Assembly: GCF_006345805.1 (NCBI RefSeq)
Contig: NW_021828076.1
Span: forward strand, 1 to 35,548
Direction: 5' to 3'
Source: Octopus sinensis
Taxonomy: Eukaryota
Length of the DNA stretch: 35,548 bases
A program made the position numbers and the translations under genes. The notes beneath the pieces were generated by a model. It was given only the letters and a program-made list of their open reading frames with translations, made no database searches and was not told the origin of the DNA. Shown piece after piece: positions 615 through 34,321 of the stretch (the stretch's first letter is position 1; every line of letters begins with the position of its first letter).

Positions 615-810
615 CTGTCAGAATTGTTAGCACGCCGGGCAAAATGCTTAGCGGCGTTTCATCCATCTTTATGTTGTGAGTGCAAATTCGGTCGAAGTCG
701 ACTTTACCTTTAATCCTTTTGACGTCAATAAAATAAGTTAAGCACCGGTGTTAATTTAATCAATTTGCTCCCTCTTAAAATTGCTAGTCTTGTGCCAAAA
801 TTTGAAACTA
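615..810 (+). mobile_element. tRNA-derived SINE family A, short-tail variant, degenerate
   Basis: gttagcacgccgggcaaaatgcttagcgg head and gtcgactttacctt core, as in the other A copies; similar copy at ~29080-29270. Confidence 0.65.
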
Positions 811-922
811 ATATTGTATATATATATATATATATCGTTGTTATTATGCAAAAGTGTCGTAAGTCCAAAACATTGCCTTCCCAGAAAACGAAAAAATAGT
901 TTCACTATTCCATAACAATACC

Positions 923-1153
923 TATTTTTTTTACTACCCACAAGGGGATAAACACAGAGAGGACAAGCAAGGACAGACAAACGGATTAAGTCGATTATAT
1001 CGACTCCAGTGCGTAACTGGTACTTATTTAATCGACCTCGAAAGGATGAAAGGCAAAGTTGAACTCGGCGGAATTTGAACTCAGAACGTAGCGGCAGACG
1101 AAATACCGCTAAGCATTTCGCCCGGCGTGCTAACGTTTCTGCCAGCTCACCGT
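923..1153 (-). mobile_element. SINE family A, full length
   Basis: Reverse complement of the 27243-27474 unit; contains a B-box-like gagttcaaattcc. Confidence 0.85.
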
Positions 1154-1336
1154 TGTAATACACTTCGGCAATTTTTGATATCTTGGCATCTGAAGCAGCT
1201 GGAGTCATGATAGTCTGACCAAAAGAACCGGCTATTGTAAGCAAAAATAAATATTGAAAACAATGCATTTGGCGAAATTTGGACATACGACAGTTTCACA
1301 TAATAGCAACGATATATATGTGTGTGTAAGTATATG

Positions 1337-1346
1337 CTTACATGTA

Positions 1347-1400
<54 letters not shown>

Positions 1401-1453
1401 CCCCAGCATGGCCACAGCTCATTAGCTGAAACTGGAAAACAAAATCAAAATCA

Positions 1454-1541
<88 letters not shown>

Positions 1542-1546
1542 ATACA

Positions 1547-1584
<38 letters not shown>

Positions 1585-1589
1585 ATATA

Positions 1590-1621
<32 letters not shown>

Positions 1622-1660
1622 GCATATATATATATATATGCATATATATGCATATATATG
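1337..1660. repeat. (TA)n microsatellite tracts, representative of many others (e.g. 1-125 ACAT, 4420-4700, 4830-4926 TG, 15810-15925 GA, 23738-23818 TAG, 34322-34460 GATA)
   Basis: Seen directly. Confidence 0.95.
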
Positions 1661-2313
1661 TGTGTCGTGATGTGTCTATCTGTGCGTGTGTGTGTGTATG
1701 CGTGTGTGTTGAACGATGTGCAGAATATTTATAATGTATATATCAACGTGGAGCGGCCCTAGTTATAATTTCAAGTGCCTATATTTTCGTACATACATAC
1801 AAACAAACAAAATTAATACTCTGTGATATAAGGTAACGATATGATACCTGAGGTTTTGCCTTTCTGAAAGCAGACTATCCTTCAAGGGATGAATTAAAAG
1901 AAAGAAACTTGCGCTGTGGACTTAATGCCTTTTTCCATCGCCCTATGCAGCCGTATATACGAAATCCCCATGTGAAGTAAATTTACGCAACGAAATCGAA
2001 GTAAAATTGCCGCGTTATTCGAAAACGGATATTCATTATTATTGATTGGATAGTAAAGTCGATGAAGTAATCAAAAATATTAAGTAATCTAGTTCAAGCG
2101 TTAGAATAACTAAAGTGTAAATAAATCCTTGACCGTATTCAATGAGCGGGTTTTTACACAAATATAACAGTACAGTTCTTAATACCTGTTCTGAAAGTAA
2201 TATACCCGTGTAATTACATATCCGCATAAATTTTAATATTTGAATTCTTTCTGCTAGTAATAAATTCCTGTCGTCTCTGTTGTGTGTAATGTTTGTTGTT
2301 ACGGCGCATTCAA

Positions 2314-2321
2314 TGACGTCA
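2314..2321. promoter_or_regulatory. Full palindromic CRE (TGACGTCA)
   Basis: Exact CREB/ATF consensus about 100 bp upstream of the TATA box, in unique sequence. Confidence 0.7.
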
Positions 2322-2372
2322 ATTTGCGTTGGAGGTGCGGCTTCTTAATAAAAACGGAGGGGTGGAGCTTAG

Positions 2373-2382
2373 CCATATACGG
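2373..2382. promoter_or_regulatory. CArG-like box (CCATATACGG)
   Basis: CC(A/T)6GG with one mismatch, embedded in AGCC..GGCT inverted flanks, between the CRE and the TATA box. Confidence 0.4.
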
Positions 2383-2420
2383 CTGAAGTGGGAAATTAAA
2401 CTGAAATGAGATCAGACAGC

Positions 2421-2456
2421 TATATAAGCTATCACGGCGTTACGAAACTTTATTCT
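2421..2456 (+). promoter_or_regulatory. TATA box (TATATAAG, 2421-2428) and Inr-like TTATTCT (A at 2452)
   Basis: TATA-to-Inr spacing of 31 nt; ATG-free 5' leader up to 2700. Confidence 0.6.
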
Positions 2457-2699
2457 GAAACTTTGACACTCACCAACGAAGTACACAGTGAAATAGTGAA
2501 ATATCTGAAGTGAGAAACACTCGACTTATAAATTCAAATCGAGGAACTTTTTAAAACTAAACTAAACGAAAGAAGGTACAGTGAAATATTTATTTGAACT
2601 TTCATCTAATTTCATACAGACTTCGCTCAGCAATATTGCATAATATCGTCGCTGCCCTGTGAATTTTCTTACCAAACAAATTATTTCTATTTCATCAAC

Positions 2700-3326
2700 A
2701 TGCTTGATAACGAAGTATATTTGAAATACGGACCCTACCGTCGCATTCGCAGAAATGCTTTGGCCAATATAATGGAAGGGTTAAATCAAGAAGCCGTTAA
2801 CTGGCTGTCGAAAAATATTGCACATCAGTCCAATTCGGTTGACCATCGATGTGAGAAATATACTGATGATGAAAGTAACGTTAGTGGTGATGAAGGCGAC
2901 GATGAAAATGAGAATGATGATGACGACGACGATGACGATGCCGGAGGCGTTGAAACCGTCGAAGAAAAAAAAGATGGGAAATATCTGGCTATAGATGAAG
3001 AGAAATCCGTGTTAAATCAGGAAAATAATGAAGGCATTACCTGCCAGAACGATTCTGAATTAAACAAGGCGGATTGTTTCAGACGTCTGAGTTCACCAAT
3101 GGAATGTCGATTCCAGTCGTCATTTGCGGCGATCCGGCGGAATGCTTTACACAATTTATTGGAAACATTAACACCAGCCGAAATCTCAACACTTGGCAAG
3201 TTGTATCAGTTGCAACATTCTGTGAAGGACTTAACTTTAGAACAAGAGCGATTCGATCACTTGGTGACACCTGTTCAATACCCATACATTGAGACATATT
3301 TCGACAAATATTTAACCCAAGTATGA
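2700..3326 (+). CDS. Intronless 208-aa acidic protein with two IRRNAL-x-N-[IL]-[ML]-E-x-L repeats; putative PKA pseudosubstrate (PKI-like) inhibitor
   Basis: Longest non-repeat ORF. A at -3 (caacATG), and no ATG between the predicted TSS (~2452) and 2700. D/E-rich linker. The repeats at aa 16-39 and 145-168 use different codons. RRNA-hydrophobic matches PKI RRNAI/RRNAL. The ORF is well supported; the function is inferred. Confidence 0.8.
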   Translation: MLDNEVYLKYGPYRRIRRNALANIMEGLNQEAVNWLSKNIAHQSNSVDHRCEKYTDDESNVSGDEGDDENENDDDDDDDDAGGVETVEEKKDGKYLAIDEEKSVLNQENNEGITCQNDSELNKADCFRRLSSPMECRFQSSFAAIRRNALHNLLETLTPAEISTLGKLYQLQHSVKDLTLEQERFDHLVTPVQYPYIETYFDKYLTQV

Positions 3327-4208
3327 TTGAAGATATTGTAACAAACGGAAGAGAAAATAAAATCATTTTAAATGTTTTAAAATGCCGAGAAAAAAAAACT
3401 GAAGCATGCGTTTCTATGAAAATTCCTTATCGGTCAAAATTTCTGAAATGAGCAGAAAGAAGAAAGAAATTATACCAAGTAGGGCGAAATGAGATAGAAC
3501 AGGATTTTGTCCATAGAAACAAAGCAACGAACAAACCTTTTTCACTAAAATCTCTGCTCATAAAAAGCAGACGACCGATTGAATGGGCTTACAGAAAATA
3601 TGTATGGTGAGCAGAGATTGTGCATATGTTATGCATTTTGTGTTTTCTCTATTAGCATGCAGTTTCGTTTTGATTAATTTATATATTTTCTGCGTGCGAA
3701 ATATTTGATGACTAACAATTTGTTAACGAGAAATAATGGATAAGAAGCATAAAATGTTTCGAAGTAAACTCTATATTGTTCAAAAGGAAAAAAGAAAAAA
3801 AAACGAACAAAGAAAAGAAAATGGAAGAAAAAAAAATCGACTAACCCGTATTGAATGAGAGACGAAAGAATTTCTTTTTGAATTTTTTTTTAACTGGAAT
3901 GCTTACATAATTCGTTTGCTTATTTATTTACCAAAAGACTCCGAAATATCGAGTAAGAAGATTACCTGTTAAAAACTGAACATTAGAGACAAGTGTGTTC
4001 CTCTGATACACACGCTTGCACACAAAACATTTGTATACCAGACATGTGTATTGGAACTTACTTTTAAAAAGATACCAAAGCATAAACATTTTCTCCCGTT
4101 TGTGTATCATATCTGATATGTCATACAATGATATATATATATGTTATGTGCCACATAAAACAAAGTTTATTGTAACACACACTCACGCAAACACATCAAC
4201 TAAACATG

Positions 4209-6363: not shown

Positions 6364-6572
6364 TTATATGAATATATATAGAGATATATATACATATATA
6401 TATACATATACTCGATGGGTTTCTTTTAGTTTCTGTCTACCAAATCCATTCACAAGGCTTTAGTCGGCCCAAGGCTGTAGTAAAAGACACTTGCCCAATG
6501 TGCCACGCAGTGGGACTGAACCCGAAAACATATGGTTGGGAAGCAAGCTTCTAACCACACAGCCACACCTGC
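6122..6572 (-). mobile_element. SINE family B (tRNA head, internal CA/TA microsatellite)
   Basis: Matches 8351-8724 in reverse. Confidence 0.85.
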
Positions 6573-8350: not shown

Positions 8351-8724
8351 AGGCGCAGGAGTGGCTGTGTGGTAAGTAGCTTGCTAACCAACCACATGGT
8401 TCCGGGTTCAGTCCCACTGCGTGGCATCTTGGGCAAGTGCCTTCTGCTATAGCCCCGGGCCGACCAATGCCTTGTGAGTGGATTTGGTAGACGGAAACTG
8501 AAAGAAGCCTGTCGTATATATGTATATATATATAATATGTGTGTGTGTATGTGTTTGTCCCCCTAGCATTGCTTGACAACCGATGCTGGTGTGTTTACGT
8601 CCCCGTCACTTAGCGGTTCGGCAAAAGAGACCGATAGAATAAGTCCTGGGGTCGATTTGCTCGACTAAAAGGCGGTGCTCCAGCATGGCCGCAGTCAAAT
8701 GACTGAAACAAGTAAAAGAGTAAA
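8351..8724 (+). mobile_element. SINE family B
   Basis: aggcgcaggagtggctgtgtggtaag A-box-like head, gggttcagtccc B-box-like motif, internal microsatellite, gactgaaacaagtaaaaga tail. Confidence 0.85.
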
Positions 8725-12540: not shown

Positions 12541-12970
12541 TCTTCTTTTATTTGTTTCAGTCATTTGACTGTGGCCATGCTGGAGCACCGCCTTTAGTCG
12601 AGCAAATCGACACCAGGACTTATTCTTTGTAAGCCTACTACTTACTCTATCGGACTCTTTTGCCGAACTGCTAAGTTACAGGGACATAAACACACCAGGA
12701 TCGGTTGTCAAGCTATGTTGGGGGGACAAACACAGACACACAAACATACACACACACACACACACACACACCACACACACACATATATATATATATAGGT
12801 ATATATATGCATATATACGACGGGTTTCTTTGAGCTTACGTCTACCAAATCCACTCACAAGGCTTTGGTCGGCCCGAGGCTATAGTAGAAGACACTTGCC
12901 CAAGGTGTCACGCAGTGGGACTGAACCCGGAACCATGTGGTTGGTAAGCAAGCTACTTACCACACAGCCA
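12541..12970 (-). mobile_element. SINE family B
   Basis: Near-full-length reverse copy with internal microsatellite. Confidence 0.85.
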
Positions 12971-13602: not shown

Positions 13603-13737
13603 AGGCGCAGGAGTGGCCGTGTGGTAAGTAGGACAAGTGTTTTCTACTATAACTTCGGGCCGACCAAAGCCTTTTGAGTGAATTTTGTAGACGGAAACTG
13701 AAAGAAGCTCGTCGTATATATGTATATATATATATGT

Positions 13738-14335: not shown

Positions 14336-14499
14336 AGGCGTAGGACTGGCTGTGTGGTAAGTAGCTTCCTAACCACATGGTTCCGGGTTCAGTCCCACTA
14401 CGTGGTACCTTCGGCAAGTGTCTTCAACTATAGCCTCGGGCCGATCAAAGCCTTGTGAGTGGATTTGGTAGACGGAAACTGAAAGAAGCCTGTCGTATA
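14336..14499 (+). mobile_element. SINE family B, 5' half
   Basis: Head through gaaagaagcctgtcgtata, then (TA)n. Confidence 0.8.
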
Positions 14500-17251: not shown

Positions 17252-17722
17252 GGTCAACGGTTAAAGTCCAACACTGGATAGCTCATGGAAATTGTAAATT
17301 TAAGAGAAATCATGTAACAACGGGAAAATGCTGAAATTACATACACGTACCCATAACTTATTGCTTTCCCAATAATTCCTTCCGATGTTTTTTCAGCTAA
17401 ATTAAATAATTACTATGACGTTAGTAATCATTGAAATAAGGAATTATGTGACGTCAATACGAGCCTGCCTTTATTAATCATTTCAGAGTTAAATACACAT
17501 AAAGAATAGAGACATTCTTCCTGCTGATTATATTATTGGTAAGGCAAAGCAGTTGGTTGAATCGATCCGTGAATCCATATGAACACTTTTGTTGCCATTC
17601 AATACCGTATTAACCGAGTAACAATACCGTATTAACCGTGTGCGCTGGGCTTTTCATTTTCAGCAGCAGCGCGTTAAATGCTTTTATCACTCTTTTTTTT
17701 TAATCTTTAACTGGTTTCAGTC

Positions 17723-30102: not shown

Positions 30103-30464
30103 TAGTATATTTTTTATATCGTGCTTTCACTTCACTACCGAGCGCAGCTCTGTGTGCCTTAGGTATGTGCTGTGATTTGTTGTGATGCTCTAATGGTTAT
30201 TGTATGGAAAGTGTTTTGCGTAGGATGTGTGCAGTGCCTAGTAGTGCAATTTTCTGTATGTTATATGTGTTTGTAAGTCCTGGTGTTTTTGTTATGTATT
30301 TGTCTGAATATTTTTTTATCATGCCTAATGCACCTACTATGATAGGAATTGTTTCTGTTTTTAGATTCCACATTCTGGTTACTTCTATTTCCAGGTCTTT
30401 GTATTTTGAGAGTTTCTCCATTTCTTTTAGAGACACGTTGTCATCTGCCGGTATTGATACATCA

Positions 30465-30466
<2 letters not shown>
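30100..30466 (-). mobile_element. R4/Dong-clade LINE 3' end no. 1 (restriction-like endonuclease C-terminus)
   Basis: IDVSIPADDNVSLKEMEKLSKYKDLEIEVTRMW..IPIIVGALG..QKIALLGTAHILRK; flanked by (ATT)n on both sides. Confidence 0.85.
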
Positions 30467-30526
<60 letters not shown>

Positions 30527-30540
30527 CATTATTATTATTT

Positions 30541-33852: not shown

Positions 33853-34321
33853 TTATTTGTTTCAGTCATTTGATTGCAGTTATACTGGAGCACTGCCTTT
33901 AGTCAAGCAAAACAACCCCCCAGGATTTATTCTTTGTAAGCCTAGTACTTATTCTATTGGTTTCTCTTGCCGAAACGCTAAGTGACGGGGACGTAAGCAC
34001 ACCAGCATCGATTGTCAGGCGATGTTGAGGGGGGGGGTAAAAACACAGACACACAAACATATGCATACACACACACACGCACACACATACACACACACAC
34101 ACAAAGACACACACACACACACACGCACATAAATATATATATATATATATATATAATATACGACGAGCTTCTTTCAGTTTCCGTCTACCAAATCCACTCA
34201 CAAGGCTTTGGTCGGTACGAGGCTATAGTAGAAGACACTTGCCCAAGGTGCTACGCAGTGGGACTGAACCCGGAACCATATGGTTGGTAAGGAAGCTACT
34301 TACCACACAGCCACGTGCCTA
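33853..34321 (-). mobile_element. SINE family B, full length
   Basis: Reverse copy with internal microsatellite. Confidence 0.85.

What the first reader, a model, noticed from the sequence alone, without database searches (positions are those of the whole stretch)
1983..2699. Immediate-early-type promoter suggests a cAMP/PKA negative-feedback module
Seen: a full CRE (2314-2321), a CArG-like box (2373-2382), TATATAAG (2421) and an Inr 31 nt downstream. There is also a C/EBP-like TTACGCAA at 1983-1990, locally frequent CpGs, an ATG-free leader and an intronless ORF. Known: CRE + CArG + TATA on a short intronless gene is the c-fos/egr type of architecture, and PKA-CREB induction underlies molluscan long-term plasticity. 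Inference: PKA activates CREB, which induces its own inhibitor, making this an activity-dependent brake on PKA.
Basis: partly seen in the sequence, partly recalled or inferred. Interest (0 to 1): 0.75.

Follow-up and report, generated by a model that had tools for sequence, protein, structure and literature searches.

The report
Conserved cAMP-type promoter, PKI-like gene
A small intronless octopus gene has a promoter with a cAMP-response element, a serum-response-type box and a TATA box that octopuses, argonauts and cuttlefish all keep, and its unannotated protein carries two motifs resembling the natural protein kinase A inhibitor, so an inducible brake on kinase A is plausible but untested.

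Summary
The CRE–CArG–TATA–Inr module is real. The same module, with the same 59-nt CRE-to-CArG spacing, sits upstream of the orthologous gene in another octopod and in two cuttlefish-type loci. Argonauta has it too, with an insertion. The rest of the non-coding DNA no longer aligns between octopus and cuttlefish. RNA-derived contigs from an octopus metatranscriptome are collinear with the genome, so there is no intron. They begin about 15 nt downstream of the proposed start site; likely cuttlefish transcript contigs begin about 18 nt downstream. A paralogous gene family also has full CREs next to a TATA box.

The 208-aa product has no Pfam or PDB match. It belongs to an unannotated family found only in cephalopods, with two invariant RRNAL motifs. 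Pfam's PKI model is the top hit, below its cut-off, for 8 of 10 relatives, and a profile alignment places PKI's key phenylalanine on F138.

The promoter architecture is strongly supported. cAMP or activity inducibility, PKA inhibition and the feedback loop remain inferences. The closest description is a new variant of known cAMP negative-feedback modules. Weak points: the O. vulgaris CArG has one mismatch, the C/EBP-like site is conserved only among close relatives, and the CpG enrichment is modest.

The parts
1983..1990 (+). C/EBP-like TTACGCAA; a weak, shallowly conserved candidate site
   Evidence: Present. Identical in octopod L003 but not kept in Argonauta.
2042..2049 (+). TTGATTGG, an inverted CCAAT-type box, in a distal conserved block
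   Evidence: GTTGATTGG is kept in the window and Argonauta; octopod L003 has GTTGATTCG, one mismatch. The paralogue promoters also have ATTGATTGG between their CREs.
2314..2321 (+). Full palindromic cAMP-response element TGACGTCA, about -138 from the proposed start site
   Evidence: Invariant in five orthologous loci.
2330..2343 (+). Conserved block TGGAGGTGCGGCTT of unknown factor specificity
   Evidence: TGGAGGTGCGG is identical in octopods and Argonauta, followed by CTT (TTT in Argonauta). Cuttlefish-type loci have TGAGGGAGCGACTT (L008) and TGAGGGAGCAGCTT (L018).
2359..2368 (+). GT/GC box GGGGTGGAGC (Sp/KLF-type)
   Evidence: GGGGCGGAGC in Argonauta and GGGTG in cuttlefish-type loci. This is the region of highest octopus-Argonauta identity, 0.70-0.72.
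2373..2382 (+). CArG-like (SRF-type) box CCATATACGG, one mismatch to CC(A/T)6GG
   Evidence: Perfect CArG at the same place in L003 (CCATATATGG), Argonauta (CCTTTTATGG), L008 (CCTTATTTGG) and L018 (CCTTATATGG), with a fixed 59-nt offset from the CRE.
2421..2428 (+). TATA box TATATAAG
   Evidence: CTATATAA is invariant in octopods and Argonauta. TATATAA is also present in L008 and L018.
2450..2456 (+). Initiator-like TTATTCT; A2452 is the proposed transcription start
   Evidence: 31 nt after the TATA box. TTCATTCT/TTTATTCT is kept in octopods and Argonauta. The RNA contig L002 begins at about window 2466.
2452..2699 (+). ATG-free, unspliced 5' leader (about 248 nt)
   Evidence: No ATG. L002 RNA is collinear with the genome in a single match.
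2700..3326 (+). Intronless ORF of 208 aa; member of an unannotated family found only in cephalopods
   Evidence: 94% identical to O. bimaculoides A0A0L8HRC2, 64% (alignment; 60% by BLASTP) to Argonauta, 32-39% to the cuttlefish orthologue.
2739..2762 (+). Pseudosubstrate-type motif 1, R14-L21 (RRIRRNAL), with Arg at P-6, P-5, P-3 and P-2, Ala at P0 and Leu at P+1
   Evidence: R17, R18, N19 and A20 are invariant in the 10-sequence family alignment. The Pfam PKI model matches this motif in P0008.
3081..3098 (+). RRLSSP, a possible PKA-type (RRxS) and proline-directed phosphorylation site
   Evidence: Read from the sequence. RRxS is kept in 4 of 5 octopod sequences and S132 is invariant. The function is inferred only.
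3111..3149 (+). Pseudosubstrate-type motif 2, F138-L150 (FQSSFAAIRRNAL, followed by HNLLETL)
   Evidence: RRNALH.LLETLT is invariant across the family. hhalign places PKI-alpha 11-29 on residues 138-156, with PKI's Phe on F138. Pfam PKI matches this region in relatives.
3327..3836 (+). 3' untranslated region, at least this far; the polyadenylation site was not determined
   Evidence: L002 RNA is collinear to window 3836. The AATAAA and ATTTA counts were not informative.

Best explanation
Positions 2300-2460 are the core and proximal promoter of a small intronless gene. From upstream to downstream it holds a full CRE (-138), a conserved GC-rich block, a GT/GC box, a CArG (SRF-type) box (-79), a TATA box (-31) and an initiator (+1 at about 2452). 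Selection has held this arrangement since octopuses and cuttlefish diverged.

The most likely working is that CREB-family factors (responding to cAMP/PKA and Ca2+) and SRF bind these sites and give rapid, stimulus-dependent transcription of an unspliced mRNA of about 1.4-1.8 kb. The product is a largely disordered 208-aa protein with two PKI-type pseudosubstrate motifs (RRIRRNAL and F-x7-RRNALH). It most likely occupies the substrate cleft of free PKA catalytic subunits, which would give a delayed, transcription-dependent negative feedback on PKA.

Shown here: the motifs, their deep conservation and spacing, the lack of an intron, RNA 5' ends just downstream of the TATA box, and the conserved RRNAL motifs with weak similarity to PKI profiles.

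Inferred: factor binding, inducibility, PKA as the target, and the feedback itself.

My estimates: functional conserved promoter about 0.9; stimulus-inducible through CRE/CArG about 0.6; product inhibits PKA-C about 0.5; the whole loop about 0.35-0.45.
For: Motifs are at the stated coordinates.

The three-part module is rare by chance, appearing in 2% of random windows. For an independent lineage, a CRE plus a perfect CArG at one fixed offset within 700 nt has a probability of about 8e-7. That figure is my arithmetic from the per-site expectations.

The CRE-CArG offset of 59 nt is identical in the window, in octopod L003-6 and in cuttlefish-type L008 and L018. Argonauta has the same elements with an insertion. 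Octopus and cuttlefish-type DNA otherwise give no blastn match at all.

The TATA box and initiator are conserved.

SRR3401912 is an octopus metatranscriptome (PMC11662614). Its contig L002 is collinear with window ~2474-3836 in one 81.7% match and starts about 15 nt after A2452.

Cuttlefish-type contigs L021 and L022 start 18 nt after the TATA-predicted start. Contigs L021, L024 and L025 end in an A-run that begins about 20 nt after an AATAAA.

Paralogue promoters carry one or two full CREs beside a TATA box.

The protein family has two invariant RRNA[LM] motifs. Pfam PKI (PF02827) is the top match for 8 of 10 relatives, with E from 5e-4 to 0.26, always on these motifs. BLASTP of PKI-alpha against the cuttlefish orthologue gives E 8e-5. 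hhalign gives E 1e-4 with PKI's Phe aligned to F138.

From general knowledge: full CREs within about 200 bp of a TATA box are the class most responsive to cAMP (Conkright 2003; Zhang 2005). PKI binding depends on Phe10, Arg15, Arg18, Arg19 and Ile22.
Against: No data on induction, factor binding or kinase inhibition were available.

In this species the CArG has a C in its A/T core.

TGACGTCA also binds ATF1, ATF2/Jun and CREM, and many CRE promoters are constitutive.

The window protein itself gets no Pfam PKI hit, and the relatives stay below the gathering score.

Motif 2 lacks the P-6 arginine.

The protein is about three times the length of PKI.

AlphaFold2 places both motifs at the start of helical hairpins, with pLDDT 70-80 locally and a mean of 48.8. 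That could mean a structural repeat rather than an extended pseudosubstrate.

Some cuttlefish-type contigs (L019, L020) extend upstream of the TATA box; whether they are DNA or RNA is unknown.

Contig ends are not a map of start sites.
Confidence: 0.42

Rival explanations
1. The promoter is a genuine stimulus-responsive CRE/SRF promoter, but the product is not a PKA inhibitor. On this reading the two RRNAL-helix units are a duplicated interaction module, or a pseudosubstrate for another kinase that prefers basic residues (PKG, Akt/S6K/RSK, CaMK). There would then be no direct PKA feedback.
For: AlphaFold2 puts both motifs inside helical hairpins of moderate confidence. Conservation extends about 20 residues past the pseudosubstrate core and the two units resemble each other, so this is a duplicated unit larger than a short motif. 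The Pfam PKI matches are below threshold, and absent for the window protein. RRIRRNA also fits the RxRxxS type of consensus (read from the sequence).
Against: RRNA[IL]HD is identical to the PKI-alpha core apart from Ile to Leu. An aromatic residue aligns with PKI's Phe10. PKI is the top Pfam match for most relatives. PKI itself is disordered when free, so a helix prediction does not discriminate.
Confidence: 0.28
2. The conserved CRE, CArG and TATA elements give basal or tissue-specific expression through constitutively active ATF/CREB- and SRF-family factors. On this reading the gene is not an immediate-early gene and is not cAMP-responsive.
For: Motif conservation shows that the sites matter, not that the gene is inducible. 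The cuttlefish orthologue is seen on 134 Logan contigs, which suggests broad steady-state expression. The 3' UTR shows no clear enrichment of AU-rich instability elements.
Against: A full palindromic CRE close to a TATA box is the class most often inducible (general knowledge). The pairing with a CArG box at fixed spacing mirrors known immediate-early promoters. The paralogues keep duplicated full CREs.
Confidence: 0.25
3. The motifs co-occur by chance in AT-rich DNA and have no regulatory role.
For: Short motifs are common, and the window has two other full CREs that do not look like promoters. The O. vulgaris CArG is imperfect.
Against: The module appears in 2% of random windows at any position. 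The same elements at the same spacing occur in five orthologous loci across octopods and decapodiforms, while the flanking DNA has diverged beyond alignment.
Confidence: 0.02

Closest known systems
PKI-alpha/beta/gamma (heat-stable cAMP-dependent protein kinase inhibitors, Pfam PF02827)
   Same: The pseudosubstrate core RRNA(I/L)HD, an aromatic residue about 11 positions upstream, an intrinsically disordered protein, and a leucine-rich helix after the motif. PF02827 is the top match, below its cut-off, for most family members.
   Different: This protein has two motifs where PKI has one. It is 190-250 aa long where PKI is about 75. It has a long acidic or serine-rich linker and a distinct conserved C-terminus (YPYIETYFDKYLTQV). 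It falls below the Pfam threshold, and the window protein is not matched at all. No strict nuclear export signal is present in the octopus copy. The family was found only in cephalopods.
c-fos and egr-1 immediate-early promoters
   Same: CRE plus CArG/SRE plus TATA within about 150 bp of the start site, and a short transcript.
   Different: No conserved Ets/TCF site beside the CArG was found. There is a single CArG, against several in egr-1. The gene is fully intronless. Inducibility is untested.
cAMP-induced negative-feedback genes: ICER (CREM P2 promoter), PDE4D short forms, SIK1
   Same: The proposed logic is the same: CRE-driven induction of a protein that shuts down the same pathway.
   Different: The proposed brake acts on the PKA catalytic subunit itself. 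The known examples act on CRE occupancy, on cAMP breakdown or on CRTC.
Pseudosubstrate inhibitor sites in PKA RI subunits (RRGAI) and the PKI-like motif of Smoothened
   Same: An R-R-x-A-hydrophobic sequence occupies the catalytic cleft.
   Different: Those motifs sit inside large folded or membrane proteins. Here there are two copies in a small disordered protein.

Membership tests
cAMP-responsive (CREB-target) TATA promoters | Full palindromic CRE TGACGTCA | tested here: met
   2314-2321; invariant in 5 orthologous loci.
cAMP-responsive (CREB-target) TATA promoters | CRE within about 200-300 bp upstream of a TATA box and start site | tested here: met
   The CRE is 107 nt upstream of the TATA box in the window, and 223-235 nt upstream in the cuttlefish-type loci, which also have extra half-CREs nearer the TATA box.
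cAMP-responsive (CREB-target) TATA promoters | CREB occupancy and induction by cAMP | not testable with these tools
   No ChIP or stimulation RNA-seq could be reached. The literature searches found nothing on this gene.
SRF/CArG (serum response element) promoters | CC(A/T)6GG consensus | tested here: inconclusive
   The window has CCATATACGG, with one mismatch. All four other taxa have perfect boxes at the homologous position.
SRF/CArG (serum response element) promoters | Adjacent Ets/TCF site (GGA(A/T)) for a ternary complex | tested here: not met
   A GGAA at 2392-2395 is kept only in the close octopod and not in Argonauta or the cuttlefish-type loci.
Immediate-early genes | Rapid induction that does not depend on protein synthesis | not testable with these tools
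   This needs an experiment.
Immediate-early genes | Short transcription unit with few or no introns | tested here: met
   RNA contig L002 is collinear with the genome across the leader, the coding region and at least 510 nt of 3' UTR. All cuttlefish-type contigs are collinear with each other.
Immediate-early genes | AU-rich instability elements in the 3' UTR | tested here: inconclusive
   Three ATTTA and one TATTTAT in about 970 nt of DNA that is about 32% GC. This was not tested against chance, and the polyadenylation site is unknown.
PKI (PF02827) | Pfam gathering score (25 bits) | tested here: not met
   The window protein has no hit. Relatives score 12-20.7 bits.
PKI (PF02827) | Pseudosubstrate R-R-N-A-(I/L) with Ala at the phospho-acceptor position | tested here: met
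   Two copies, invariant across the family.
PKI (PF02827) | High-affinity determinants: aromatic residue at P-11 and Arg at P-6 | tested here: inconclusive
   In motif 2, F138 is at P-11 but P-6 is Ala. In motif 1, Arg is at P-6 and P-5 but there is no Phe at P-11; Tyr is at P-10 and P-13 (read from the sequence).
PKI (PF02827) | Leucine-rich nuclear export signal downstream of the motif | tested here: inconclusive
   LAKLKQLYL in the cuttlefish orthologue fits a class 1b signal. ISTLGKLYQL in the window protein does not fit strictly (read from the sequence).
PKI (PF02827) | Inhibition of the PKA catalytic subunit | not testable with these tools
   This needs a kinase assay.

The most novel reading that the evidence does not exclude
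Cephalopods evolved their own family of bivalent PKI-like proteins, in two paralogous lineages, each with two pseudosubstrate motifs. CRE-containing promoters of the immediate-early type have driven their genes since before octopuses and cuttlefish split. On this reading neural activity or cAMP induces a direct inhibitor of the PKA catalytic subunit, and that inhibitor sets the duration of PKA signalling during plasticity. The compact promoter of about 200 bp would also serve as an activity reporter for cephalopod brains.
Probability: 0.33. Interest if true: 0.78.

Novelty: new variant of a known kind. Interest (0 to 1): 0.6.

Why it matters
Cephalopod neuroscience has few validated activity-dependent genes. 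A 2025 preprint uses creb and egr1 for this purpose. A compact, deeply conserved CRE+CArG+TATA promoter would give both a candidate marker gene and a small reporter cassette.

If the product does inhibit PKA, the pathway would have a transcription-dependent brake acting on the catalytic subunit itself. That differs from the known ICER, PDE4 and SIK1 loops, and it would arise in a lineage where PKA-CREB plasticity is central. The family is unannotated: its members are labelled 'uncharacterized', 'hypothetical' or 'unnamed' in O. bimaculoides, Argonauta hians and Sepia pharaonis. So even the basic description is new annotation.

The pieces are short and the predictions are sharp, which makes the hypothesis directly testable.

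Tried and rejected
- Pfam and PDB sequence searches with the window protein gave only low-complexity noise. A 31-aa motif query against PDB chains found nothing.
- The exhaustive phmmer search found no relative outside the family. P0005 and P0009 are repetitive false positives.
- The AlphaFold2 model was too low in confidence (mean pLDDT 48.8, pTM 0.19) to justify a fold search, so none was run.
- I looked for the paralogue inside the window and found none.
- I checked whether the other two full CREs mark promoters. The one at 720 lies next to a repeat-derived ORF and SINE-like sequence. The one at 17449 was not pursued.
- The ORF at 756-1286 (- strand) matches several places in Argonauta, so I take it to be repeat-derived and not a divergent neighbouring gene.
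- A multiple alignment of core promoters across paralogues was uninformative.
- Counts of 3' UTR instability elements and polyadenylation signals in the window were inconclusive.
- Literature searches by accession numbers, UniProt ids, 'RRNAL', and octopus immediate-early-gene terms found no paper on this gene. Only the nature of run SRR3401912 was recovered.
- I did not search for a canonical PKI orthologue in octopus. So I cannot say whether this family replaces PKI or adds to it.

Full report
**Source and setting.**
The window's ORF is found exactly on chromosome record OX597815.1 of assembly GCA_951406725.2. From memory I believe this is Octopus vulgaris. A 94% protein match to O. bimaculoides A0A0L8HRC2 supports the genus. 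The window is AT-rich (about 30-45% GC) and full of microsatellites and SINE-like repeats. The 208-aa ORF at 2700-3326 is its only convincing protein-coding ORF.

**Check of the observation.**
- All the stated motifs are at the stated coordinates:
  - CRE TGACGTCA, 2314-2321.
  - CArG-like CCATATACGG, 2373-2382, with one mismatch.
  - TATATAAG, 2421-2428.
  - Initiator-like TTATTCT with A at 2452, 31 nt after the TATA box.
  - TTACGCAA, 1983-1990.
- There is no ATG between 2452 and 2699, and an in-frame stop lies at 2607.
- CpG observed/expected is 1.3-1.5 over about 1250-3250 and 0.6-1.1 further downstream. This is a modest local enrichment.
- Full CREs occur 3 times against 0.54 expected. 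Perfect CArG boxes are not enriched.
- A CRE + CArG (up to 1 mismatch) + TATA module appears in 2% of composition-matched random windows, anywhere and on either strand.

**Conservation.**
This is the decisive evidence. I retrieved orthologous loci by exact-protein look-up:
- an octopod from Logan runs SRR118693xx (L003-6, 85% protein identity);
- Argonauta hians (L007, 60-64%);
- a cuttlefish-type genome contig (L008);
- a cuttlefish-type contig, L018. Its protein cluster includes Sepia (Acanthosepion) pharaonis CAE1234015.1.

In all of them a full CRE is followed by a CArG box. The start-to-start distance is exactly 59 nt in the window, L003-6, L008 and L018. It is 67 nt in Argonauta, which has an insertion after the CRE. 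All four relatives have perfect CArG boxes, so the C in the window's box is a species-level deviation.

Between the two elements, a GGAGGTGCGG block and a GT/GC box (GGGGTGGAGC; GGGGCGGAGC in Argonauta) are also kept. This interval is the peak of octopus-Argonauta identity. The TATA box and the initiator are conserved among octopods and Argonauta. The cuttlefish-type loci have TATATAA 223-235 nt after the CRE, with two extra half-CREs in between.

Outside these elements, octopus and cuttlefish-type DNA give no blastn match at all. Using the per-site expectations, a CRE plus a perfect CArG at one fixed offset within 700 nt has a chance of about 8e-7 per independent lineage (my arithmetic). The C/EBP-like site is kept only in the close octopod. 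A distal CCAAT-type TTGATTGG (2042-2049) is shared with Argonauta and differs by one base in the close octopod.

**Transcript evidence.**
Run SRR3401912 is described as an octopus metatranscriptome (PMC11662614), so contig L002 is RNA-derived. L002 aligns to window ~2474-3836 in a single 81.7% match, and its first base falls at about window 2466. There is therefore no intron in the leader, the coding region or at least 510 nt of 3' UTR. The contig begins about 15 nt after the proposed start and 38-45 nt after the TATA box.

In the cuttlefish-type species, contigs L021 and L022 come from two runs and both begin 18 nt after the A of a CAGT initiator, which lies 30 nt after the TATA box. Contigs L021, L024 and L025 end in an A-run that begins about 20 nt after an AATAAA. 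Other contigs (L019, L020) extend upstream of the TATA box, and whether they derive from DNA or RNA is unknown. This is consistent with a start near 2452, but it is not a start-site map.

**The product.**
The protein has no Pfam or PDB match. An exhaustive search of 1.84 billion cluster representatives, followed by a profile search, found only a small unannotated family:
- orthologues in octopods, Argonauta and cuttlefish;
- a paralogous lineage with the pattern MTGE...HECKA. It includes O. bimaculoides A0A0L8HSK0.

All members have two RRNA[LM] motifs. In the window protein they are YRRIRRNALANIMEGL (residues 13-28) and FQSSFAAIRRNALHNLLETLT (138-158). Most other positions in the protein vary.

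The Pfam PKI model (PF02827) is the best match for 8 of 10 relatives. E ranges from 5e-4 to 0.26 and scores from 12 to 20.7 bits, against a cut-off of 25. The match always falls on these motifs, and on both of them in P0008. It aligns to the cuttlefish orthologue with E 8e-5 and to the family profile with E 1e-4 at 58% probability. That alignment puts PKI's phenylalanine on F138 and RRNAIHD on RRNALHN.

AlphaFold2 predicts a mostly disordered protein (mean pLDDT 48.8). It has two helical hairpins (residues 12-43 and 139-178, pLDDT 70-80) that begin at the motifs. This neither supports nor excludes pseudosubstrate binding.

**Paralogue promoters.**
The decapodiform paralogue has two full CREs flanking an inverted CCAAT box, followed by TATATAA. 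This arrangement is conserved between two species (L013, L015). The octopod paralogue has a full CRE 275 nt before its ATG (L010). CRE-driven transcription therefore looks like a property of the whole family.

**Interpretation.**
From general knowledge, a full CRE near a TATA box is the promoter class most responsive to cAMP, and CRE + SRE + TATA is the c-fos/egr design. So stimulus-dependent transcription is the most likely working (about 0.6). A pseudosubstrate with the PKI core and matching flanking determinants makes PKA-C the most likely target (about 0.5). The full feedback loop is an inference (about 0.35-0.45).

There are three rivals: an inducible gene whose product does something else, constitutive use of the same sites, and chance. 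Chance is effectively excluded.

**Comparison with known systems.**
The gene works like PKI combined with the logic of ICER, PDE4D or SIK1 feedback. It is not a member of Pfam PKI by the curated threshold, and it differs in size, in having two motifs, and in its conserved C-terminus. I rate it a new variant of a known kind.

Noticed in passing
window 720-727: A second full CRE (TGACGTCA) lies in sequence resembling the 3' part of a cephalopod SINE (GTCGACTTTACCTTTAATCCTTTTGACGTCAATAAAATAAGT). It sits next to a repeat-derived ORF at 756-1286 (- strand) that matches several places in the Argonauta locus. It is probably a chance CRE created inside a repeat.
   Followed up: partly
window 17449-17456: A third full CRE, with a half-site (TGACG) about 30 nt upstream at about 17416. 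No ORF or TATA context was examined.
   Followed up: no
window 6414-6524, 8403-8516, 12816-12929, 13635-13716, 14384-14497, 34159-34272: A SINE-like repeat of about 114 nt is present in many copies on both strands. It is shared with the Argonauta hians locus at 73-93% identity.
   Followed up: partly
window 1300-1660: A long (TA)n / TATATA-rich microsatellite lies about 0.8-1.1 kb upstream of the promoter. It produces spurious ORFs rich in Ile and Tyr.
   Followed up: no
window 30197-30529 (-): An ORF fragment (…LSKYKDLEIEVTRMWNLKTETIPIIVGALGMIKK…LLGTAHILRKTLSIQ) looks like the C-terminal remnant of a retroelement protein. It is flanked by long (ATT/AAT)n and (TAT)n runs.
   Followed up: no
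L013 9640-9760; L015 650-770: The promoter of the paralogous 'MTGE…HECKA' gene has two full CREs 54 nt apart that flank an inverted CCAAT box (CATTGATTGGTTG), followed by TATATAA. This is conserved between two decapodiform-type species.
   Followed up: partly
L009 (P0012), L014 (P0010), P0006: Several database proteins of this family carry false C-terminal extensions. The gene caller read through a TGA stop as if it coded for Trp. The real cuttlefish orthologue is 189 aa and ends …GKFATHV.
   Followed up: yes
L008 9835-10420: In this long-read contig the two halves of the orthologous ORF are in different frames. This is probably an assembly indel, which is why the database protein P0007 holds only the C-terminal 139 aa.
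   Followed up: partly
window 3081-3098: RRLSSP, 17 residues before motif 2, is a PKA-type RRxS site followed by Ser-Pro. It is kept in most octopod sequences, so the putative inhibitor might itself be regulated by phosphorylation.
   Followed up: no
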